A stretch of DNA of 64,000 nucleotides, from the IMG/VR virus record IMGVR_UViG_3300044641_007115, positions 1 through 64,000 of that record. One strand, written 5' to 3'. How positions within the stretch are numbered: position 1 is the first letter of the stretch; each line of letters opens with the position of its first letter. Positions 2,509-30,277 of the stretch are shown in pieces. The position numbers and the translations under genes are program-made. Under the pieces are notes generated by a model. It was given only the letters and a program-made list of their open reading frames with translations, was not told the DNA's origin and searched no databases.

Positions 2509-3576
2509 GTGCCTAATCCCAACACAGCCAAATTCCCATCGGAGTTGCCGACCGATAACGATCTGCAAGTCGCCTCACGGCGCGCAATCGGTAATCTTGA
2601 CGAAGACATCACAACCAATAGCACCACGTTTCGTATCAAGGTTGGGCAAGGCTTGCGCTTTCAGGTACCCTGTCTGATTCAAGTCGATCAGGAAATCATG
2701 CGGGTCAAAGCCAAGACCGGCGACATTCTCCAACAGATCGACCGTGGATTCGCGGGATCGAATGCGACACCGCACTCCAACAACACCGAAATCCGTGGCT
2801 ACATTCTGGACTGGCACCACAATCAGATGGCGGCGGAAATCAAAGCCATCGCTCAGGCGCTTGGTATCAACTTGGCGAATGTGGTGCGACACGTCGATGT
2901 CACGTCCAACGGAGACATCACAGGTGTGTTCAACAACCTTGTGCTGAAGCCGGTTGGCACAGCGGGCACATATGGCGGCGCGGGCAAGTGGCTACAGATC
3001 ACAACCGACTCGAAAGGTCGGGTGGTCTTAGCGACGAATCAAGACGGATACCGATACTTCCCGATCTTCTACAAGGCGGCAATCGTTCAAGGAACAAATG
3101 CGGTCCTTGGTTTTTCATTTGCTAACGTGGATGCGCCGAACGCGGTTCCGGTGACGGGAACAAACGGAAGTCTCTTCGCGGTGGCATCATTCACACAGAC
3201 GAATGAGTATTGGGTACAGGACCATTTCACGCTCCCTGAAGATTGGGATGACGAAGAGCCGGTGACCGTGGATATCATCTGGCGCATCAACGCAACGTCT
3301 GGCAATGTGAAGTGGAAGCTGTGGACGACTTCGATGCGCAACGGATCGGATTCCGATCCGGCTTTCCAGTTAACGCCGGACAGTGTAACGACTACCGTAC
3401 CGACCCCGGCCTATACGGTTGTGCGGTCGATCATTCCGGCGATGCATGTGAATGGATTCCAAGCCGGGGATGAAGTCTTTTTCAAGTTCGCCCGTGCTGA
3501 TGACGACACAGCGGCGGCGGCGGCGGAATTGATTGCTCTGCGGTTCAACATCGCACGTAAGTTCACTTTGTTCTAA
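2509..3576 (+). CDS. Virion structural/tail-associated protein
   Basis: N-terminal ~120 aa paralogous to 13261..14238 (PNPNT..FP...PTD ... HHNQ.AAEI); tail-fibre-like linker GTYG...QITTDSKGRV. Confidence 0.65.
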   Translation: MPNPNTAKFPSELPTDNDLQVASRRAIGNLDEDITTNSTTFRIKVGQGLRFQVPCLIQVDQEIMRVKAKTGDILQQIDRGFAGSNATPHSNNTEIRGYILDWHHNQMAAEIKAIAQALGINLANVVRHVDVTSNGDITGVFNNLVLKPVGTAGTYGGAGKWLQITTDSKGRVVLATNQDGYRYFPIFYKAAIVQGTNAVLGFSFANVDAPNAVPVTGTNGSLFAVASFTQTNEYWVQDHFTLPEDWDDEEPVTVDIIWRINATSGNVKWKLWTTSMRNGSDSDPAFQLTPDSVTTTVPTPAYTVVRSIIPAMHVNGFQAGDEVFFKFARADDDTAAAAAELIALRFNIARKFTLF

Positions 3577-19393: not shown

Positions 19394-20625
19394 TACGGGT
19401 ACGCCTCAAATACGGAGTCCTTGACCAGTTCGAGCACCGTCACATATTGCTTTTGGTCTACCTTGTGTCGAATGCCGGAAATCAAAAACTTCCCTCTGTA
19501 GTGTTTATCGACCATCTGTTGATTGTTTTGCGGTGGCTCTGGCGACGGCATCTCAAATTTCACAACATCGCCTACTTTCAGATTGCTGTTGCCGGGCACG
19601 CTCACGCTCAACTTGATGTTCTGTAGCTGTTGTAATTGTGACACACGATCCAACAGCCAACGGTCCACTTGGTTCACGAAGGGAGCGACGCCGGTGCTGT
19701 ACATCTTGAACTTGTTCGCTTTGTTGTGCAAGTCTGACCGGGAGTTCGAGTACAGTTTGTTGCCGGGATACAGGTGTTTGTGCTTGTCGAAATTCGCCGT
19801 GTAGTCCCATGTGAAGCGTTCCCACTTCTTCCGCACATGGCTGTGTGTGATGAGTTCGGAAGCATACATGCCTTGCTCTTGATTCTCTCGAACGTCGCTG
19901 TAGAAATCGACCGTGTAGGCTTGGATGGCTTCCATGTCTTGATTGATCGTCCGGGCGTGATGCGTCCCCGATTCCCTGACGTTGGCCGGTTGATAGATGA
20001 TGTCTTGTACCGGTCCCTTCTCCAGACACTTTTCAATGGGAATCCAATAGAACTTGTCGAAGGTCTGATAGTAGAGATAGTTCGCGCCGTTGTAGCTCGA
20101 AGGATTGGCGCGCGTAGACAACCACTGAATCCCTTGGATCGGGTGGAGATTCGGGATTATGATGTGATGGATGTACTTCGATGGTTCAATCTCGATAGCG
20201 CCGCCGCCAAGCCATGTGTTGTGTAAGTCGGCTACGATCTCATGGATTTGCTTGCTCTTGTATGATTTGCTGACACGGACCTTGTAGTTCTTCCATGCCT
20301 CATCCGCACAGAAATTGAGGATGTATGCCAAGTTTCGATCTTTGCCAAGGTGCCGGTCGGTCGCGCTGTAGACACGAAATTGTTTCGTCAATAGTCCTTT
20401 GCCGGGCGTTTCAAGTCCGATGGTCAGGGTTTCAAATCCGAAGATCGGAAAGTTCGCCAGCCGGTTCTGTGTGTCGGAAATGAGCACGGTACCGCTCATC
20501 GTCGGGGACCAGATGTCTTCGAAGATATTGAGTTCGTGGTAGATGTAGCGAATATCCCAAATCTCACCCGTGCAAAGCGTCAGGGTCAGTTCTTTGAGGT
20601 TATAATCCTTCGGGAAATCGGCCAT
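19393..20625 (-). CDS. Baseplate hub protein (T4 gp27-like)
   Basis: LNIFEDIWSPTMSG..LISD; C-terminal VPGNSNLKVGD...GKFLISGIRH...LVKDS; follows gp53. Confidence 0.7.
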   Translation of the reverse strand: MADFPKDYNLKELTLTLCTGEIWDIRYIYHELNIFEDIWSPTMSGTVLISDTQNRLANFPIFGFETLTIGLETPGKGLLTKQFRVYSATDRHLGKDRNLAYILNFCADEAWKNYKVRVSKSYKSKQIHEIVADLHNTWLGGGAIEIEPSKYIHHIIIPNLHPIQGIQWLSTRANPSSYNGANYLYYQTFDKFYWIPIEKCLEKGPVQDIIYQPANVRESGTHHARTINQDMEAIQAYTVDFYSDVRENQEQGMYASELITHSHVRKKWERFTWDYTANFDKHKHLYPGNKLYSNSRSDLHNKANKFKMYSTGVAPFVNQVDRWLLDRVSQLQQLQNIKLSVSVPGNSNLKVGDVVKFEMPSPEPPQNNQQMVDKHYRGKFLISGIRHKVDQKQYVTVLELVKDSVFEAYP

Positions 20626-20626
20626 T

Positions 20627-21181
20627 TTACACCAACTTGTTTTCCTTCATGAGCCGGATCAACTGGTCTTCCAGCATCGGCGTATGTTTCTTGTCGATCA
20701 ATCGAATGTTCCGCTTCGCGTCGTTCTCTGCCACCAAGAAATCATATAGTGTCACCCGCTTGCGTTCGTTCACCGGGGTACGGACAAACGTGTCGTAGTC
20801 GATCTGGACGCCGTGGATGTCTTCGTAGTGATGAAGGGTCTGATAGGTATAAATCAGACCGTCTTGCTGTGGCGTGGTGTATTGCGCCCGAATGTATGCG
20901 ATGAAATCTTCATAGGACAGCGGCCAGTCGGTGTACGGGTTGATGATGTCATTCGCCAGAAGAACGATCCAGTGATACCCGGTCCAGCCGTAATAGCGAT
21001 GGGCTATGTCTTCGATCCGTTCGCCATCCTTGACGGAGTACTCATACATTTCGAGCATTTCCGTCTTGATGACATCGCGGATCTTCACCCGCTGAAGGAT
21101 GTTCACCGTCGCCCGAAGGTTGTTGTCGTCCAACATGTCGTATTGGACAAACGGAATCGTTGAAAAGAAAGGAGTCGGCAT
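20627..21181 (-). CDS. gp53: Baseplate wedge subunit
   Basis: FF..IP...Y; LysM-like Y.VKDGERIEDIAHRYYG; HHYE; END.KRNIRLI. Confidence 0.85.
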   Translation of the reverse strand: MPTPFFSTIPFVQYDMLDDNNLRATVNILQRVKIRDVIKTEMLEMYEYSVKDGERIEDIAHRYYGWTGYHWIVLLANDIINPYTDWPLSYEDFIAYIRAQYTTPQQDGLIYTYQTLHHYEDIHGVQIDYDTFVRTPVNERKRVTLYDFLVAENDAKRNIRLIDKKHTPMLEDQLIRLMKENKLV

Positions 21182-22842: not shown

Positions 22843-23712
22843 ATGTCATTCACCCTACCGCGTGTCGGAGATATTCCGCGTCTTGGGTTACCGCCCTTGC
22901 CGCCATTTCAGCCGATTGCGATCAGTTCGATTCCGCCGCGCCTGACAAACTTCGAAGCGTTCGTTAACAACTCTCCGCGTCTGGTGTTGGATCATCCAAA
23001 CTACGCAAACATCACCAATTTCACCGCAACGATGTTTGCCAGCAACGTGTTTGCCCGGCCCAATCGGTTTCGGGTAGAAGTAGCGACACTCAATCTATTT
23101 CAAAATTTGGACCGCACTATCGGCCCGCCCGGATACGACCAGAATTGGGCACAGTGGTTCGGTGCCAAAGACGCTATCGAAACCGGCAACCGGCTGATGT
23201 TCTATTGTTTCAATGCCGAAATCCCCGGCGTGTCTTATCAGACCGACGACAACCGCATCTATGGCGCACAGTTCAAGGTTCCATACATGCCGCAATACAA
23301 CGACATCGATCTTGAATTCTATGTCGGGGACGACATGTTCGAGCGGTGGTTCTTCGAGGGATGGATGCATTCCATCATGGACCCACAGACGCAAGACTTC
23401 AACTACATCGGCGAATTTTCAACCGGCATCACGATCACTCAAATGGATCTGAACGATCAAGACGTGTACACTTGTACGCTACTCGAAGCGTTCCCCATTG
23501 CAATCAATCAGATGGATCTGAATTGGGACACCCAAAATGAAATCCATCGGGTGTCGGTGACATTCACCTACAAGCGGGTATTGACCGTGGATCTGGACGA
23601 ACGCACTCTCAGTGTCAACAATGATGCTGGTCGCGGCAACCGCGAACGTTTCCGTGAAACAGTGATTACACCGGCTCAGCGTCAGGCACAACAAAACCAA
23701 CCCCGGTCCTAA
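22843..23712 (+). CDS. gp54: Baseplate tail-tube initiator / tube-like protein
   Basis: ARPNRF; C..AE.PG; ER.FFE.W; AFP..I....L.W; VTF.Y. Confidence 0.7.
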   Translation: MSFTLPRVGDIPRLGLPPLPPFQPIAISSIPPRLTNFEAFVNNSPRLVLDHPNYANITNFTATMFASNVFARPNRFRVEVATLNLFQNLDRTIGPPGYDQNWAQWFGAKDAIETGNRLMFYCFNAEIPGVSYQTDDNRIYGAQFKVPYMPQYNDIDLEFYVGDDMFERWFFEGWMHSIMDPQTQDFNYIGEFSTGITITQMDLNDQDVYTCTLLEAFPIAINQMDLNWDTQNEIHRVSVTFTYKRVLTVDLDERTLSVNNDAGRGNRERFRETVITPAQRQAQQNQPRS

Positions 23713-23768: not shown

Positions 23769-24539
23769 ATGAGCAACCTTCCATTACTCAAAACGCCGGA
23801 ATATGAATTGACTATTCCTTCTTCCGGCCAGCGGGCGGCGTTCCGTCCATTTCTAGTCCGGGAAGAAAAGATCCTCTTGATGGCTATGCAGAGCGAAGAT
23901 GAGAAACAAGTCATCCGCGCTGTTGAAGACATCATCAAGTCGTGTCTGATCGGAACCATTGATCTCAGCAAGTTGTCGATGTTCGACATCGAATACATCT
24001 TCCTGAAGATCCGCTCCAAGTCCATCGGCGAAATCGTCGAAATGCGGTATCAGTGCCAGCGGGAAATCCCGAAGACCGTGCGCGACGAACACACCGGCGA
24101 AACACAGGTGGTCAACCGCCCGTGTGGTACGAATGTGCCGATCAAAATCCATCTGGATGAAGTGAAAGTGGACAAGGACCCGAACCATACCACTCAAATC
24201 AAATTGACTGATGAAGTCGGGTTGACTATGCGATATCCCAACCTTTCGTTGGCCCGCAAATTGCAAACCGAAGGCCGGAATACAGAAGATGTTGGTCAGG
24301 CACTCGATTTGATCGCGGCCTGTATCGAATCGGTCTTCGACGCCGATCAGGTCATCACGGAGTTCAACCAAGCTGAAATGGTCAAATGGTTGGAAACTCT
24401 GACGCAGCAACAGTTTGCCGAAATTCAGAAGTTCTTCGACACGATCCCGCGCCTTCGCCACACGGTCCACTTCCAGTGCCCGGCATGTGGACATGAGCAA
24501 GACATCGTGATCGAAGGCATTCAAAATTTTTTCGGATAG
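23769..24539 (+). CDS. gp26: Baseplate hub subunit
   Basis: LP....P.YEL.IPS.G....FRPFLV.EEKILLMA; FD.EYIFL.IRSKS.GE; C..CGH....IEG..NFF. Confidence 0.9.
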   Translation: MSNLPLLKTPEYELTIPSSGQRAAFRPFLVREEKILLMAMQSEDEKQVIRAVEDIIKSCLIGTIDLSKLSMFDIEYIFLKIRSKSIGEIVEMRYQCQREIPKTVRDEHTGETQVVNRPCGTNVPIKIHLDEVKVDKDPNHTTQIKLTDEVGLTMRYPNLSLARKLQTEGRNTEDVGQALDLIAACIESVFDADQVITEFNQAEMVKWLETLTQQQFAEIQKFFDTIPRLRHTVHFQCPACGHEQDIVIEGIQNFFG

Positions 24540-24544
24540 TCCTG

Positions 24545-24736
24545 TTGCACAATTCCCTAGCGAACTACTACGAAGTACAGTTCGCCTTGGCTCAACACCA
24601 TAAATACTCGATTACGGAAATCGAATCCTTGATGCCGTGGGAGCGGGACATATACGTGACCATGCTGAACAATTGGGTCAAGGAAGAGCAAGAAAGGATG
24701 CGTTCCGAACAGGCACGCCAAAAAACGGGTAGGTGA
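24545..24736 (+). CDS. gp51: Baseplate hub assembly protein gp51-like (possibly made as a frameshift extension of gp26)
   Basis: L.NYY...FAL.QHHKYS.TE.E.L.PWER.IY; no ATG or SD, only TTG. Confidence 0.8.
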   Translation: MHNSLANYYEVQFALAQHHKYSITEIESLMPWERDIYVTMLNNWVKEEQERMRSEQARQKTGR

Positions 24737-24742
24737 AGAGCT

Positions 24743-24970
24743 ATGAAATGGTGGATTGATTTTGTACATGGATTCAACACTCCAGCGGGCAATTTGGTTG
24801 CCTGTCTGGTTCTGGTCCTTTTTCTGACCCCATTCCTGATTCAAAACAATCCGAAAGCGTGGGAAGCGTTGACATTCATCTTGGGAGTAATCGGTGGTCT
24901 GGTTCGGGGTGCAAATACGAACTCTGAACCGCCACCGCCCGCCCCGAAGCAACAGGATGAAGAAGAGTAA
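24743..24970 (+). CDS. Two-TM small membrane protein (holin-like?)
   Basis: Two hydrophobic helices, charged/proline-rich C-tail. Confidence 0.45.
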   Translation: MKWWIDFVHGFNTPAGNLVACLVLVLFLTPFLIQNNPKAWEALTFILGVIGGLVRGANTNSEPPPPAPKQQDEEE

Positions 24971-24973
24971 AGA

Positions 24974-27900
24974 ATGTCCAAGTTCCAAGATTTTGTCGTT
25001 GGGTTGAACGAATCCGCCGGTATCACCCCGGCGGGCGCTATTCTTTTGTCGCAATTCGGAGCCGACGAAAAGAACAAAGCTATCAGTTCCATCAAATCTC
25101 AAGTTCGTGGCGCATTTCAGGGTATTCGTTCTATCGTCGGAAAACGAGAACCCGGTAATGACGACGCGGCTCAAGCCGTTGCGTATGCACGCCGGGCATC
25201 CCGTGTGCGCGGTACCGCCGAAAACTTTCTGATGATGCAGACCGGTCTTCTCCGGTCGGTATCAAAGAACATCAGCACGATGAATGATTGGATGGCGTCT
25301 CTGTACAAACAGATGGCGTCACCGTCCGCCCCTGCAACTCCGACAAAAACCACCCCAACAACCGCCCGCCGGACGCCTATGCGCGATCCAATCACGGGGC
25401 GGTTTGTCGCACGTGAACTAACCGCATGGGAGCGGATCGCTAAGTCATTCGAATCTTTCCGGGCAAACATGAAGCCTGTCGCTTCGACTGCCCCGGTTCC
25501 ACTTCAGCGCGATCCGAAAACCGGACGGTTCCTTCCGCGCACAGCGGAACAGACACCAAACACATGGATGAATATCACTGACGTGCTCATGAAGCCGCTC
25601 AAGGGTATTCGTGTGTCTCTTCAGGAAATCCAAAAGAAACAGATCCAACCGTTGTTGGATAAGGGCATTCGTTTGCGGGACAAAGGCAAAGACTTTGCGG
25701 AGTCCATGCGCAAAATGATGTCGCCTTCCGAATGGTCGAAGAGACTGCAATCAGTTTTGACCAAGCCATTCCAGCCGCTCATCAGTATATTTCGGCGATC
25801 AGGTGCGACTACACAGGTCACACCTGAAGGAACCACGTCGGCACCGAACGTATTCACCGAAGAAACGAAGAAGACCGGCGGCTTATTGAGCCGCATGACG
25901 AATTTCATGGAGAGTGTCCGGGACACTTTCAATGATCTCCCCGGCGTCGGTGCGGTCACATCTCTGATGGTCATGAAAGTGACCAAGGCACAAACTGAAG
26001 AGCTAGTGAAGATTCGCGAAATCCTTGAGCGAACCTTCAAACTCGAACAATCAGCGGAAGCCCGCGCCGAACGTGCGGAAGATGCCAAAGAAGAAACTTC
26101 ATTTGAAAGCCGGGCCGGACAAGCCCGCGTCATGCCGACATTCGACAAACTGAAAAAAGAAAAGGGTGGCGGTGGATGGTTCGGCGGACTCATACAAACC
26201 ATCTTGGGTGAATTGGTTGAAGGTGCAATGCTTCGCTATGGCCTCAAAGGTCTTGGTGGAAAACTCCTGTCAAAGTTCCCGGTCTTAGGTAAGATCGGTG
26301 ACCTATTCAAAAAGATTCCCGGTGTCGGAAAGCTGTTGGGCATGTTCAAAGGTGGCGGTGCGGCGGCGGGTGGCGTTGGAATTCTTGCCAAACTAGGCGG
26401 CATTGGCGAATGGCTCAGCGGTCTGACCAAAGTTTTTACGAAGATCCCCGGCCTTGGCAAGCTGCTAGGACTAGGCAAAGGTGTGCTTGGCAAACTGGCT
26501 TGGCCGCTCACCGTCATCATGGCTATTTTCGACTTCTTCAGCGGATGGAAAGACGCGGGAAAGGTTCTTGGTAAAGCCGAAGATCAGTTGACAATGATGG
26601 ACCGCCTTGGCGCGGGCGTCGGAAGTATTCTTGGCGGTCTGGTCGGGATTCTCGATAGTGTCCTTGGATTGTTCGGAATCAAAACCGACATGGGTGGTTT
26701 CGTCAAGAAGTGGTACGCGAAAATCTATTCAACCATCGCCAACTTCCTTGTCGATTCCATCATGAAACCATTCACAGCGCTTGGTGAACAAATTGCCAAG
26801 GTGTTTGGTTTCCGCTCATTGCAAAGCGCACTTGACTTCGTTCAGTTCAAATTGGACAAGGGCACGAAGTTCATCAAAGAAGCCTTCACCAAAATGGCGA
26901 CGACCGTTGGTGAATACATCGACGGATTGAAGAAGCGGGCTATCGAGGGCATCAAGAGCATTGGTGCGGCCATCGGCGACTTCTTCACGAAGACAATCAA
27001 TTGGGCAACCGAAGGCGTCAAAAATCTGGCCGGTGCTATCGGCGAAAAATTCGTCGGTATCGGCGACAGCGTGGCGAAGTATCTTGGATTCGACAGCATG
27101 AAGTATGCCTACGAATCGTTGCGGGATAAGATCACAGGCGTCTTCTCTGGCATCGGTGCTGGCGTCGCTAAGCTGTTAGGATTCGAAAACTTCGATGCGT
27201 TAGTGGATCGCGTCATGGCATTGAAGGATATGATCCTCAAACCGTTCACCTACATTCAAGAAAAGATCGGTGGGTTTGTCAAGGGTCTTGGCAAGATTGC
27301 CGGATACTTGGGCTACAACGACAAAGAGTTTGCCGACTATGAAAAGAAGGTGAACGAAGACCGGGCGGCGAATGAACGCGCCCGTCAACAGAAAGCACAA
27401 CAGGCACGGGAAGCCGCTCAGCGGGCCGAACAGCGACCGAATGAACCCATTCAGGTTCCTACCACCCCGGCGTCTACACCGGCACCGGCGCTCGAAACAC
27501 AGAACTACGATCCGGCACTGGATACCAGCCGTCAAGTGGATATTCCCGCACCGACACGGATGCCCGCCGCTGGCGCGCCGCCCGTTTCTCAAACTCCAAC
27601 CACAGAAGGTCAAGGGTCAGAATGGGTGCGCCCACTCATGACTGGTGTGACATCCGACTTCGGTATGCGTAATCACCCGGTCACCGGTCAGGAAGCCAAA
27701 ATGCACGAAGGTACCGACTACGCTGGCAAGATGGGTGATCCCGTCAAAGCGGCGGGAGACGGGGTTGTGCAATTGGCCTCTTCGCTTAGAGGGTATGGCA
27801 ACGTTGTCTATCTCAACCACAAGAACGGATATCAGACGCGCTATGCGCATTTGTCATCATTCGCCCCGCTCAGCATCGGTCAGGAAGTCAAAGCTGGTCA

Positions 27901-29086
27901 GGTGATCGGCGCGGTCGGCAATACCGGCATCGGTACCGGCCCACATCTACATTTCGAGGTTCGCAAGGGTTGGTCGTTGGCGAACAATCAGACCAAACCG
28001 GAGAACCCGGAAATCTTCTTCCGGTCACAACAAGAGACACAAGAACAGGATCACTCACAGCGGCCCTCAGCGGTCCCTGTACAGCGTCCGCCACGTGATC
28101 CTGATGTGATGACTGGATGGAAACGTCCGAACCCTGTAGCGTCCGCTATCAGTACCGGCATCGGTCGTATAGCGGATACCGTCCTATCCAAAATTCCACG
28201 CGGTTCAACCCGTCCTGTCGTCCCGCCGCGTGATCCGTCGATGCGGACACCGGGACCGGGTGGACCGGGAAGCGGCGGAATCAACTACCGCCCCGGACAA
28301 GTTCCGCCTGAAATCGCGGAAATGGCCGTCAAGATGGAAAAGGAAACCGGCATCCCGGCGGCGGTCACTATCGCACAGTGGGCAACGGAAAGCGGTTGGG
28401 GACAGAAAGGCATCGGCAACAATGTCTTCGGTATGACCAAAGCGCGCCGCCACACCAAGAGCCAAACGAAGAGCACAACCGAAGACATCACCTACGATCA
28501 GTTGATGAAGTTCAGCCCGGCGGAACGGGCATCTGTTCGCACGCTGGACGGACAGCCGATCAATGGTCCGTGGCAAGGCAAGATGAAAGTCAAAATGGAT
28601 CGGGAGTTCGCAGACTTCGATACACTCGAAGACGCATTCCGGGACCATGCCCGTTTGTTGTCTGCCAACACGGGACCGTACAAGACAGCGTTCGACCGGT
28701 ATAAGATGACCGGCGATGTTCAGGGATTCATCCGCGACATCGCACCGACCTACGCTACCGACCGAAACTACAGCAATGTGATTGGCCGCATCGCCGGTCA
28801 GCGGAATGTCATGGATGCGATTGGCAGTTCACGCAATGCCTTGGGCGTCGCGCCGCCGCCGGTCACCGTGGCACAAGCTCCGACGATGGGACGGGACATC
28901 ATGCGAACCTCAGCGGAAAATGCACAGATGGCCCGCTCATTGGCACAACAGGCACAAGGCGGCACACTGAATGTTGCTCCGGTGAACGTCAATCAGAACA
29001 CCACCAGCATCGTGGCGGATCTGAAGGCGCGCAACACAGAGAACACCCACAAGCGCATCATGGACCGGGAATACTACCGGACCTAA
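24974..29086 (+). CDS. Tape-measure-like protein with M23 peptidase and GH73 glucosaminidase domains
   Basis: Long Gly/Ala helical repeats; HEGTD...YGN...H.NGYQTRYAHL (M23); AQWATESGWG..NNVFG and YATD (GH73). Confidence 0.8.
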   Translation: MSKFQDFVVGLNESAGITPAGAILLSQFGADEKNKAISSIKSQVRGAFQGIRSIVGKREPGNDDAAQAVAYARRASRVRGTAENFLMMQTGLLRSVSKNISTMNDWMASLYKQMASPSAPATPTKTTPTTARRTPMRDPITGRFVARELTAWERIAKSFESFRANMKPVASTAPVPLQRDPKTGRFLPRTAEQTPNTWMNITDVLMKPLKGIRVSLQEIQKKQIQPLLDKGIRLRDKGKDFAESMRKMMSPSEWSKRLQSVLTKPFQPLISIFRRSGATTQVTPEGTTSAPNVFTEETKKTGGLLSRMTNFMESVRDTFNDLPGVGAVTSLMVMKVTKAQTEELVKIREILERTFKLEQSAEARAERAEDAKEETSFESRAGQARVMPTFDKLKKEKGGGGWFGGLIQTILGELVEGAMLRYGLKGLGGKLLSKFPVLGKIGDLFKKIPGVGKLLGMFKGGGAAAGGVGILAKLGGIGEWLSGLTKVFTKIPGLGKLLGLGKGVLGKLAWPLTVIMAIFDFFSGWKDAGKVLGKAEDQLTMMDRLGAGVGSILGGLVGILDSVLGLFGIKTDMGGFVKKWYAKIYSTIANFLVDSIMKPFTALGEQIAKVFGFRSLQSALDFVQFKLDKGTKFIKEAFTKMATTVGEYIDGLKKRAIEGIKSIGAAIGDFFTKTINWATEGVKNLAGAIGEKFVGIGDSVAKYLGFDSMKYAYESLRDKITGVFSGIGAGVAKLLGFENFDALVDRVMALKDMILKPFTYIQEKIGGFVKGLGKIAGYLGYNDKEFADYEKKVNEDRAANERARQQKAQQAREAAQRAEQRPNEPIQVPTTPASTPAPALETQNYDPALDTSRQVDIPAPTRMPAAGAPPVSQTPTTEGQGSEWVRPLMTGVTSDFGMRNHPVTGQEAKMHEGTDYAGKMGDPVKAAGDGVVQLASSLRGYGNVVYLNHKNGYQTRYAHLSSFAPLSIGQEVKAGQVIGAVGNTGIGTGPHLHFEVRKGWSLANNQTKPENPEIFFRSQQETQEQDHSQRPSAVPVQRPPRDPDVMTGWKRPNPVASAISTGIGRIADTVLSKIPRGSTRPVVPPRDPSMRTPGPGGPGSGGINYRPGQVPPEIAEMAVKMEKETGIPAAVTIAQWATESGWGQKGIGNNVFGMTKARRHTKSQTKSTTEDITYDQLMKFSPAERASVRTLDGQPINGPWQGKMKVKMDREFADFDTLEDAFRDHARLLSANTGPYKTAFDRYKMTGDVQGFIRDIAPTYATDRNYSNVIGRIAGQRNVMDAIGSSRNALGVAPPPVTVAQAPTMGRDIMRTSAENAQMARSLAQQAQGGTLNVAPVNVNQNTTSIVADLKARNTENTHKRIMDREYYRT

Positions 29087-29596: not shown

Positions 29597-30277
29597 ATGT
29601 TGACCTTTAACACATCCCGCTTGCATCAGCCGTCGATGTACTTTCAGACCAAGTTTCCGAAAGACGGCATTGTATTGCACTTCACAGCGGGGACGACCGC
29701 CAGCGGCGCGATTGCGACGTTTGAATCGTCTCCACGAATCAACAAGTACCCGATGTCCGTACCCTACGTGATCGGGAACGACCCGGCGGCGACGGTTTTC
29801 AAACTGTTCGACGATGAGTTTTGGGCATACAATCTGGCAATCACCGGCCAGTGGGCACAGCGACACAAACATGACAAGCGTACAGTTGCGTTTGAAATTG
29901 TCAACCCCGGCCCGCTTCGCAAGGTTGGAGACAAGATGTGTTTCTGGCCGAAGAACTGGACAGCACCATACTGCTCTGTCAGCGAAACGGACAAGTACAT
30001 CGAAGTGCCCGCGTACCGTGGTGAGAAGTTCTTCGCCACGTATACACTCCAACAGATCGCCAATACCGTTGCGCTGTGTGAGATGATGTGCGACAAGTAC
30101 GGTATCCCGAAGGTGATTCCACCAGCGGCGAAACGCATGGCCTTCGACATGCCCTACTTCGATAAGTTCAAGGGTGTGTTCACGCACGTCAACGTCCGGC
30201 CCGACAAATGGGATTTGGGTCCGGCGGGTGAATCGATCTGGCAAGCCCTTCTGAATGCGGGATACCGGGAAGCCTAG
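29597..30277 (+). CDS. N-acetylmuramoyl-L-alanine amidase (Amidase_2), probable endolysin
   Basis: IVLHFTAG, FEIVNPG, H.NVR.DK.D Zn-ligand pattern; late promoter motif. Confidence 0.85.
   Translation: MLTFNTSRLHQPSMYFQTKFPKDGIVLHFTAGTTASGAIATFESSPRINKYPMSVPYVIGNDPAATVFKLFDDEFWAYNLAITGQWAQRHKHDKRTVAFEIVNPGPLRKVGDKMCFWPKNWTAPYCSVSETDKYIEVPAYRGEKFFATYTLQQIANTVALCEMMCDKYGIPKVIPPAAKRMAFDMPYFDKFKGVFTHVNVRPDKWDLGPAGESIWQALLNAGYREA

What the first reader, a model, noticed from the sequence alone, without database searches (positions are those of the whole stretch)
24497..24736. Candidate -1 programmed frameshift joining gp26 and gp51
Seen: gp26 ends AAT TTT TTC GGA TAG, a T_TTT_TTC heptamer (24527-24533). 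The gp51 ORF is in the -1 frame, open from 24497, with no ATG or SD. A shift yields ...QNFF-RIVLLHNSLANYY. The pair precedes the tape-measure-like gene with one small ORF between. Established: lambda G/GT-type tail chaperone frameshifts sit just before tape-measure genes. Inference: this gp26/gp51 pair is the T4-like counterpart of G/GT, an arrangement I do not recall being described for T4-like phages.
Basis: partly seen in the sequence, partly recalled or inferred. Interest (0 to 1): 0.6.

Follow-up and report, generated by a model that had tools for sequence, protein, structure and literature searches.

The report
Tail-chaperone frameshift in a T4-like phage
The slippery T-run at the end of this phage's gp26-like gene is almost certainly a real, conserved -1 frameshift site that makes the long form of its tail assembly chaperone (the counterpart of T4 gp51 and lambda GT), but this arrangement in T4-like phages was already published in 2022.

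Summary
The gp26-like gene (23769-24539) ends AAT TTT TTC GGA TAG. The -1 frame is open from 24497 to 24736, has no ATG, and encodes a 67-residue peptide of the 'gp51' family.

In 76 of 77 distinct related sequences, the in-frame heptamer T_TTT_TTN lies 0-9 nt before the stop. The preceding codon always ends in T, across five codons and four amino acids. The -1 peptide is conserved, without gaps, from its first residue, and often has no possible start codon.

The predicted fusion (322 aa) is collinear with full-length T4 gp51. T4 gp51 is itself a gp26 paralogue with this C-terminal extension. This genome has only one such gene. The modelled N-terminal domain matches three solved tail assembly chaperones (Z 7.3-7.9). 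A tail-tube-family gene lies upstream and a tape measure gene downstream.

So this is a G/GT-type chaperone pair made by recoding, most likely ribosomal -1 slippage. It is not new. Vladimirov, Gautam and Davidson (Virology 2022) identified gp26/gp51 as the T4-like chaperones, and a later paper cites that work for poly-T slip signals in these genes. I could not read that paper. RNA polymerase slippage on the T-run is not excluded.

The parts
22843..23712 (+). Tail-tube-family gene (gp54/gp19-like, 289 aa) directly upstream of the chaperone gene
   Evidence: phrog_45 'tail tube' E 5.5e-35. Weak Pfam Phage_T4_gp19 hit. Relatives carry PF23849 Phage_TTP_2 at the same position.
23769..24539 (+). 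Short chaperone form (TAC-N, T4 gp26-like), 256 aa, the 0-frame product
   Evidence: PF12322 E 1.8e-66. phrog_150 positions 6-232 of 282. AF2 model pLDDT 91.7. Residues 1-95 match solved tail assembly chaperones 3fgx, 3klu and 2ob9 at Z 7.3-7.9.
24494..24496 (+). TGA that closes the -1 frame upstream of the slip site
   Evidence: In some relatives this stop abuts the heptamer, which leaves a 13-nt overlap zone.
24513..24517 (+). GAAGG, a Shine-Dalgarno-like element 9 nt upstream of the heptamer; a possible stimulator (inferred)
   Evidence: An SD-like GGAGG, GAGG or AAGG lies 5-20 nt upstream in 71 of 76 relatives. It is encoded by conserved Glu-Gly codons, so it cannot be separated from protein constraint.
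24527..24533 (+). Slippery heptamer T_TTT_TTC, the site of the -1 shift
   Evidence: Conserved in phase in 76 of 77 distinct relatives.
24537..24539 (+). 0-frame stop TAG, one codon after the heptamer
   Evidence: In relatives the stop lies 0 nt (10), 3 nt (61), 6 nt (1) or 9 nt (4) after the heptamer.
24533..24736 (+). -1 frame extension (TAC-C, annotated 'gp51' in cyanophages): 67 codons plus TGA. Joined to residues 1-255 it gives a 322-aa long form.
   Evidence: phrog_634 E 2.4e-28, and the C-terminal positions 239-278 of phrog_150. Gap-free alignment from residue 1. Collinear with T4 gp51. Modelled as three helices, pLDDT 82.5.
24743..24970 (+). Small hydrophobic ORF (75 aa) between the chaperone and tape measure genes; function unknown
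   Evidence: An ORF of similar size was called at this position in five close relatives. No family hit.
24974..29086 (+). Tape measure protein (1370 aa) with embedded M23 peptidase and glucosaminidase domains
   Evidence: Pfam PF01551 and PF01832. The N-terminal 859 aa hit several tape-measure PHROGs, E 1.8e-6 to 3e-3.

Best explanation
The gene at 23769-24539 encodes the short tail assembly chaperone of a T4-like phage (TAC-N, equivalent to T4 gp26 and lambda G).

A minority of ribosomes slip back one base while tRNA-Phe occupies both TTT (P site) and TTC (A site) of T_TTT_TTC at 24527-24533. They then read CGG ATA GTC... in the -1 frame, miss the TAG at 24537, and add 67 residues. The result is a 322-aa long form (TAC-NC, equivalent to T4 gp51 and lambda GT).

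By analogy with lambda, the shared N-terminal chaperone domain coats the tape measure protein encoded just downstream. The rarer C-terminal three-helix extension would dock that complex onto tube or hub proteins while the tail is nucleated.

Shown here: the signal and its conservation, the homology and collinearity, the chaperone fold, the synteny, and the single gene copy.

Inferred: that the slip is ribosomal, the ratio of the two forms, and what each domain binds.
For: 1. Signal. The heptamer T_TTT_TTN is in phase in 76 of 77 distinct gp26 3' ends, drawn from IMG/VR loci, metagenome contigs and cultured phages.
- The P-site codon is TTT in 76 of 76, against a baseline TTT share of 0.61.
- The preceding codon is AGT, AAT, TCT, GAT or GGT: always T-ending, although it encodes four different amino acids.
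- The T-run always starts exactly at that wobble base.

2. No independent start.
- 40 of 76 have no ATG, GTG or TTG from the upstream -1-frame stop to extension codon 8; 18 of 76 have none up to codon 18.
- In five loci the zone where both frames are open is only 13 nt.
- Gene callers mostly leave the ORF uncalled.

3. Coding from the slip onward.
- In the first 19 extension codons of close relatives, synonymous versus non-synonymous codon differences are 216/185 in the -1 frame, against 66/338 and 48/340 in the other two frames.
- The peptide alignment is gap-free from residue 1.

4. The product makes sense.
- T4 gp51 hits PF12322 over residues 1-201 and phrog_150 over positions 13-280 of 282. 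T4 gp26 and the window's 0-frame product stop at about position 232-235.
- In a MAFFT alignment, the fusions run without a gap across the junction alongside five Straboviridae gp51 proteins, while the short gp26 proteins end 3-4 residues past it.

5. This 224-kb genome (96% complete) has only one PF12322 gene.

6. Chaperone identity.
- Residues 1-95 of the model match 3fgx_B (Z 7.9), YqbN 3klu_A (Z 7.4) and the HK97 tail assembly chaperone 2ob9_B (Z 7.3). Unrelated rows score 4.1 or less.
- The gene order is tube-family gene, chaperone, tape measure.

7. Literature.
- gp26 and gp51 are listed as hub assembly chaperones, and gp51 is absent from the particle (PMC3004832).
- Citing Vladimirov et al. 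2022, PMC10885494 says some T4-like phages carry one short and one long chaperone gene instead of frameshifting.
- PMC12846349, citing the same paper, says poly-T sequences are known -1 signals in TAC-N genes of T4-like phages.
Against:
- No conserved RNA structure follows the heptamer. RNAalifold finds none in 76 sequences, so any stimulator would be only the nearby stop and an SD-like Glu-Gly motif.
- A T6 run could also support RNA polymerase slippage, which yields the same protein.
- Several distant clades keep an ATG overlapping the stop (TGATG or TAATG), so a free small peptide may be made there in addition.
- Ackermannviridae lack the canonical heptamer.
- The complex prediction of the extension with the tube protein gave no answer.
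Confidence: 0.8

Rival explanations
1. The long form is made by transcriptional slippage. RNA polymerase adds one extra U on the T6 run (24527-24532) in a small share of transcripts, and ordinary translation of these gives the same 322-aa protein.
For: - The conserved element is a homopolymer run of 6-8 T.
- No downstream RNA stimulator is conserved.
- Only a few percent of long form is needed, by analogy with lambda GT.
Against: - The run is only 6 T in 54 of 76 sequences and never longer than 8. From general knowledge, efficient bacterial RNA polymerase slippage usually needs about 8-9 or more.
- The run always begins at a codon's third base, giving a perfect X_XXY_YYZ phase. The last position is free to be C, T or G, as expected for tandem tRNA slippage.
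- Citing papers read the 2022 work as 'separate genes' in some phages and as '-1 frameshift signals' in the others.
Confidence: 0.1
2. The -1 ORF is a separate small gene (a free 'gp51' peptide of about 60 aa), as annotated in GenBank cyanophage records. It would be started at the TTG at 24545, or by termination-reinitiation next to the TAG.
For: - A TTG lies 6 nt after the stop.
- Distant clades have an ATG overlapping the stop.
- GenBank records annotate small ORFs here.
Against: - The TTG is absent in relatives L092, L093 and L094.
- 40 of 76 sequences have no start codon of any kind up to extension codon 8, yet the residues before that point are conserved and under coding constraint.
- Annotated starts differ even between near-identical cyanophages: locus position 3028 versus 3106.
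- This model does not explain the wobble-level conservation of the heptamer, or the collinearity with full-length T4 gp51.
Confidence: 0.07
3. The frame break is an artefact or a pseudogene: a homopolymer sequencing error or decay in what is really one long gene.
For: The break lies in a homopolymer run, which is a typical error site.
Against: - The same two-frame layout, with a 0-frame stop 0-9 nt after the run, recurs in 76 distinct sequences from many samples, platforms and cultured isolates.
- The short product matches the natural length of T4 gp26.
Confidence: 0.01

Closest known systems
T4 gp26 / gp51 (hub assembly chaperones; TAC-N and TAC-NC of T4-like phages, Vladimirov et al. 2022)
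   Same: - Same protein family: PF12322 and phrog_150.
- The 0-frame product equals the short gp26 form. The frameshift product is collinear with the long gp51 form, including the C-terminal helical extension.
   Different: In T4 and the other Straboviridae examined (Ac42, avDM1, GAP161, Makalu), the two forms are separate paralogous genes, divergent or tandem. Here one gene makes both by recoding, and no second copy exists.
Lambda G / GT tail assembly chaperones (Levin 1993; Xu, Hendrix & Duda 2004, from my own knowledge)
   Same: - A -1 shift on a heptamer near the end of the short ORF, with the extension in the -1 frame.
- A position just before the tape measure gene.
- No need for a conserved downstream RNA structure.
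- A chaperone fold in the N-terminal domain, shared with the HK97 and YqbN chaperones.
   Different: - No sequence similarity, and no hit to any Pfam family other than PF12322.
- The protein is more than twice as long, with an added domain carrying Cys-x-x-Cys motifs.
- The heptamer is T_TTT_TTC, not G_GGA_AAG.
- A small ORF sits between the chaperone and tape measure genes.
P2 E / E+E' and Mu gp41/42 (contractile-tail chaperone frameshifts, from my own knowledge)
   Same: The same logic in myoviruses: a short and a long chaperone made by recoding, encoded upstream of the tape measure gene.
   Different: Unrelated sequences. Mu uses a -2 shift. Not compared here with tools.
T7 gene 10A/10B and the GTTTTT sites of Vandenendeviridae/Andersonviridae chaperone genes (PMC12846349)
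   Same: A poly-T slip site in which tRNA-Phe moves from UUC to UUU.
   Different: Those sites are shorter and not full X_XXY_YYZ heptamers. They resemble the Ackermannviridae variant seen more than the window's canonical heptamer.

Membership tests
Tail assembly chaperone pair made by -1 frameshift (lambda G/GT type) | Encoded between a tail tube gene and the tape measure gene | tested here: met
   A tube-family gene lies at 22843-23712 and the tape measure gene at 24974-29086, with one 75-codon ORF between the chaperone and the tape measure.
Tail assembly chaperone pair made by -1 frameshift (lambda G/GT type) | Second ORF in the -1 frame, overlapping the end of the first, without its own conserved start | tested here: met
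   40 of 76 relatives have no ATG, GTG or TTG before extension codon 8.
Tail assembly chaperone pair made by -1 frameshift (lambda G/GT type) | X_XXY_YYZ slippery heptamer in the overlap, conserved among relatives | tested here: met
   T_TTT_TTC at 24527-24533. Present in 76 of 77 relatives, with wobble-level conservation.
Tail assembly chaperone pair made by -1 frameshift (lambda G/GT type) | Tail assembly chaperone fold in the shared N-terminal part | tested here: met
   Model residues 1-95 against 3fgx_B (Z 7.9), 3klu_A (Z 7.4) and 2ob9_B, the HK97 chaperone (Z 7.3). The next unrelated rows score 4.1 or less. These Z values are moderate. Foldseek found nothing.
Tail assembly chaperone pair made by -1 frameshift (lambda G/GT type) | Sequence membership in a curated chaperone family of lambda, HK97 or P2 type | tested here: not met
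   The only Pfam match above cut-off is PF12322. No PDB sequence hit.
Tail assembly chaperone pair made by -1 frameshift (lambda G/GT type) | Two proteins made in a fixed ratio; the short part binds the tape measure and the extension binds tube protein | tested here: inconclusive
   The ratio cannot be tested with these tools. The complex prediction of the extension with the gp19-like tube protein gave no answer.
T4 gp26/gp51 family (Pfam PF12322 T4_baseplate) | Profile match above the curated cut-off | tested here: met
   224 bits against a cut-off of 24.5.
T4 gp26/gp51 family (Pfam PF12322 T4_baseplate) | Long form carries the gp51-type C-terminal extension, collinear with T4 gp51 | tested here: met
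   phrog_634 and the C-terminal positions of phrog_150. Gap-free junction in the alignment with five gp51 proteins.
T4 gp26/gp51 family (Pfam PF12322 T4_baseplate) | Needed for hub and tail assembly but absent from the virion | not testable with these tools
   Known for T4 gp51 (PMC3004832). No data exist for this uncultured phage.
Transcriptional slippage sites | Long homopolymer run (about 8-9 or more, from general knowledge), with no need for codon phase | tested here: not met
   The run is 6 T in the window and in 54 of 76 relatives, with a maximum of 8. Its phase is strictly fixed.

The most novel reading that the evidence does not exclude
The long chaperone form might be made wholly or partly by RNA polymerase slippage on the conserved T6-T8 run, not by ribosomal slippage. 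T4-like phages would then set their chaperone ratio at the transcript level. A related open point: Ackermannviridae keep an invariant R ATT TTC ATT TAA with a start-less -1 ORF, which would need a non-canonical shift.
Probability: 0.1. Interest if true: 0.5.

Novelty: already known. Interest (0 to 1): 0.3.

Why it matters
The chaperone pair sets up tape-measure-guided tail assembly. For decades T4 seemed to lack the otherwise near-universal G/GT-type frameshift.

The family now gives a natural comparison. One lineage, the Straboviridae examined here, fixes the short and long forms as two genes. Most other T4-like lineages keep one gene plus a slip site.

In practice, public annotations are still wrong. 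Cyanophage 'gp51' ORFs are called from arbitrary internal starts or not called at all. The correct annotation is one joined, frameshifted CDS.

As a discovery it adds little, because the 2022 paper already covers it.

Tried and rejected
- **Downstream stimulatory RNA.** RNAalifold on 76 sequences gave no structure, and nine close relatives gave -0.94 kcal/mol. The mean z-score of the 60 nt after the heptamer was -0.34. A local hairpin, GCGAAC at 24560-24565 pairing with GTTCGC at 24580-24585, appears in some close relatives. It starts 26 nt after the heptamer and is not conserved, so I rejected it.
- **Solved structures by sequence.** No match for the window protein or for T4 gp51. Foldseek against the PDB found nothing significant.
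- **Extension peptide.** No credible Pfam family: DUF6760 matched 3 of 49 members and Stealth_CR2 matched 14 of 49, all weak. The fold search gave only generic three-helix matches, Z 5.5 or less.
- **Complex prediction** of the extension with the gp19-like tube protein (L108:1306-1845): no support, and no evidence against binding.
- **The primary paper** (doi 10.1016/j.virol.2021.11.003) is not held. Its content is known to me only through citing papers.
- **Earlier literature searches** on gp26, gp51 and frameshift found nothing relevant.
- No other genetic code was used.

Full report
**1. The observation**

The window holds an ORF at 23769-24539 on the + strand (256 aa). Its last codons are AAT TTT TTC GGA TAG.

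- TTTTTTC lies at 24527-24533, in the X_XXY_YYZ phase of that ORF.
- The -1 frame is closed by TGA at 24494-24496, open from 24497, and ends at TGA 24734-24736.
- It has no ATG.
- The ORF is a clear member of Pfam T4_baseplate PF12322 (E 1.8e-66). The -1 piece matches phrog_634 'baseplate hub assembly catalyst' (E 2.4e-28).
- A 75-codon hydrophobic ORF and a 1370-residue gene follow.

The heptamer alone means little. TTTTTTY occurs 21 times in the window, fewer than in shuffles.

**2. Conservation**

The window is the first 64 kb of a 224,490-bp uncultured virus record. I collected gp26-like loci from these sources:

- 80 IMG/VR loci;
- three cultured Synechococcus phages;
- seven metagenome contigs at 53-87% protein identity;
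- cultured phages of other T4-like clades.

Among 77 distinct sequences, 76 carry T_TTT_TTN in phase, 0-9 nt before the 0-frame stop.

- The P-site codon is TTT in all 76, although TTT makes up only 61% of Phe codons in these genes.
- The preceding codon is AGT, AAT, TCT, GAT or GGT. That is four different amino acids, always with T at the wobble base, and never the commoner TCA or GGA.
- The T-run is 6-8 long and always begins at that wobble base.

This is the pattern expected of a slip site, not of a conserved Phe-Phe dipeptide.

**3. The -1 ORF is not a free-standing gene**

- In 40 of 76 sequences there is no ATG, GTG or TTG between the upstream -1-frame stop and extension codon 8. In 18 of 76 there is none up to codon 18.
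- In five loci the zone where both frames are open is 13 nt, essentially the heptamer itself.
- The peptide aligns without gaps from its first residue.
- Among close relatives, the first 19 codons after the slip show 216 synonymous against 185 non-synonymous codon differences in the -1 frame. The other two frames show 66/338 and 48/340.
- The window's TTG at 24545 is lost in relatives L092, L093 and L094.
- GenBank annotators picked different internal starts in near-identical cyanophages. Gene callers mostly skip the ORF.

**4. What the fusion is**

In T4, genes 26 and 51 are divergent neighbours, so no junction exists there.

- T4 gp51 (249 aa) matches PF12322 over residues 1-201 and phrog_150 over its whole length.
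- T4 gp26 (208 aa) and the window's 0-frame product stop about 45 profile positions short. The window's -1 peptide fills those last positions.
- In a MAFFT alignment, the predicted fusions of 14 diverse phages run gap-free across the junction alongside gp51 of T4, Ac42, avDM1, GAP161 and Makalu. The gp26 proteins of those same phages end 3-4 residues after it.

So the 0-frame product corresponds to gp26 and the frameshift product (322 aa) to gp51. The window's genome has only one PF12322 gene, so recoding is its only route to a long form.

**5. Function**

- An AlphaFold2 model of the short form is confident (pLDDT 91.7).
- A Foldseek-independent search of PDB representatives puts three tail assembly chaperones on top, all over model residues 1-95: 3fgx_B (Z 7.9), YqbN 3klu_A (Z 7.4) and the HK97 chaperone 2ob9_B (Z 7.3). 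Unrelated rows score 4.1 or less.
- The Z values are moderate. The three best hits are nonetheless all of one functional kind, and they cover a whole domain.
- A tail-tube-family gene lies upstream.
- Downstream, the N-terminal 859 residues of the large gene hit several tape-measure families, and its C-terminal part carries M23 peptidase and glucosaminidase domains.
- The extension is modelled as three helices.

The layout therefore matches lambda G/GT-H. The T4 review literature lists gp26 and gp51 as hub assembly chaperones, with gp51 absent from the particle (PMC3004832).

**6. Mechanism**

Tandem slippage of two tRNA-Phe on T_TTT_TTC is the simplest account. It fits the strict phase and the free seventh base (C in 53 sequences, T in 22, G in 1).

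- I found no conserved downstream RNA structure.
- Possible helpers are the 0-frame stop 0-1 codon after the heptamer in 71 of 76 sequences, and an SD-like GAGG, GGAGG or AAGG 5-20 nt upstream in 71 of 76 (GAAGG at 24513-24517 in the window). That motif is also a conserved Glu-Gly pair.
- RNA polymerase slippage on the T-run would give the identical protein and is not excluded. The short run (6 T in most) argues against it.

**7. Spread of the arrangement**

- The canonical site plus a -1 extension occurs well beyond the cyanophage-like group. I found it in Ralstonia RSP15, Sinorhizobium phiM19, Stenotrophomonas Marzo, Vibrio K491, Rhizobium RHph_N34 (TTG as the A-site codon) and Aeromonas AsFcp_1.
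- The first five of these also have an ATG overlapping the stop.
- Four Ackermannviridae genera instead share an invariant ATT TTC ATT TAA with a -1 ORF but no full heptamer. Kuja and SUMAE have CTT TTY.
- The five Straboviridae examined for gp51 (T4, Ac42, avDM1, GAP161, Makalu) have two separate genes.

**8. Prior art**

Direct searches on gp26, gp51 and frameshift found nothing. [quoted passage not shown]

- The PRFect paper says some T4-like phages carry one short and one long fused chaperone gene instead of frameshifting (PMC10885494).
- The phage Adele paper says poly-T sequences are known -1 signals in TAC-N genes of T4-like phages (PMC12846349).

One GenBank record already names gp51 'tape measure protein assembly chaperone'. 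The primary paper is not held, so I cannot say exactly how much of the above it shows. The core idea is published.

**9. Verdict**

The feature is real and well conserved, but it is not new. Its remaining value lies in correcting annotations and in the still open question of ribosomal versus polymerase slippage.

Noticed in passing
window 24974-29086: The tape measure protein (1370 aa) carries both an M23 peptidase domain (residues 909-999) and a glucosaminidase domain (1116-1274) in its C-terminal third. An Amidase_2 gene follows at 29597-30277. That makes three cell-wall-degrading activities next to the tail genes.
   Followed up: partly
window 24743-24970: A 75-codon hydrophobic ORF sits between the chaperone and tape measure genes. 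ORFs of 69-89 codons were called at the same place in five close relatives (L091, L092, L094, L095, L096). It is absent in the cultured cyanophages, where a large ORF follows the extension directly. It has no family hit.
   Followed up: partly
L087 3220-3400; L102, L103, L107 (Ackermannviridae): Four genera share an invariant ATT TTC ATT TAA at the end of the gp26 gene, with a conserved -1 ORF. That ORF is unannotated in two of the four records and called as a small hypothetical protein in the other two. There is no X_XXY_YYZ heptamer. Only tRNA-Phe could re-pair (TTC to TTT), which suggests a non-canonical shift like the one recalled for T7 gene 10.
   Followed up: partly
L085, L086, L088, L089, L090 (junctions): Distant T4-like clades keep the T_TTT_TTN heptamer and also have an ATG overlapping the 0-frame stop (TGATG or TAATG). 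A free small peptide made by termination-reinitiation may exist alongside the fusion.
   Followed up: no
L001 3106-3195 versus L002 and L003 3028-3195: Near-identical Synechococcus phages annotate 'gp51' from different internal ATGs (29 versus 55 codons). Neither annotation joins it to gp26. These are public annotation errors.
   Followed up: yes
L091 2262-2870, compared with window about 20625-20627: A relative at 87% identity has a GIY-YIG homing-endonuclease gene inserted between the gp53-like gene and the neighbouring tail gene. In the window those two genes abut.
   Followed up: no
window 23769-24539, residues about 96-256 of the product: Beyond the chaperone-fold N-terminal domain, the protein has a large extra domain. 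It carries a Cys-x-x-Cys motif near the C-terminus (CPACG) and further conserved cysteines at positions 59, 96 and 185. T4 gp51 has lost the CxxC that T4 gp26 keeps. No structural match was found for this part.
   Followed up: partly
G000 C1 about 151.8 kb (L108:1306-1848) and about 78.6 kb (L110): The gp19-like tail tube gene lies about 127 kb from the chaperone and tape measure genes. A third gp19-family match exists as well. The tail module is therefore split across the genome, as in T4.
   Followed up: no
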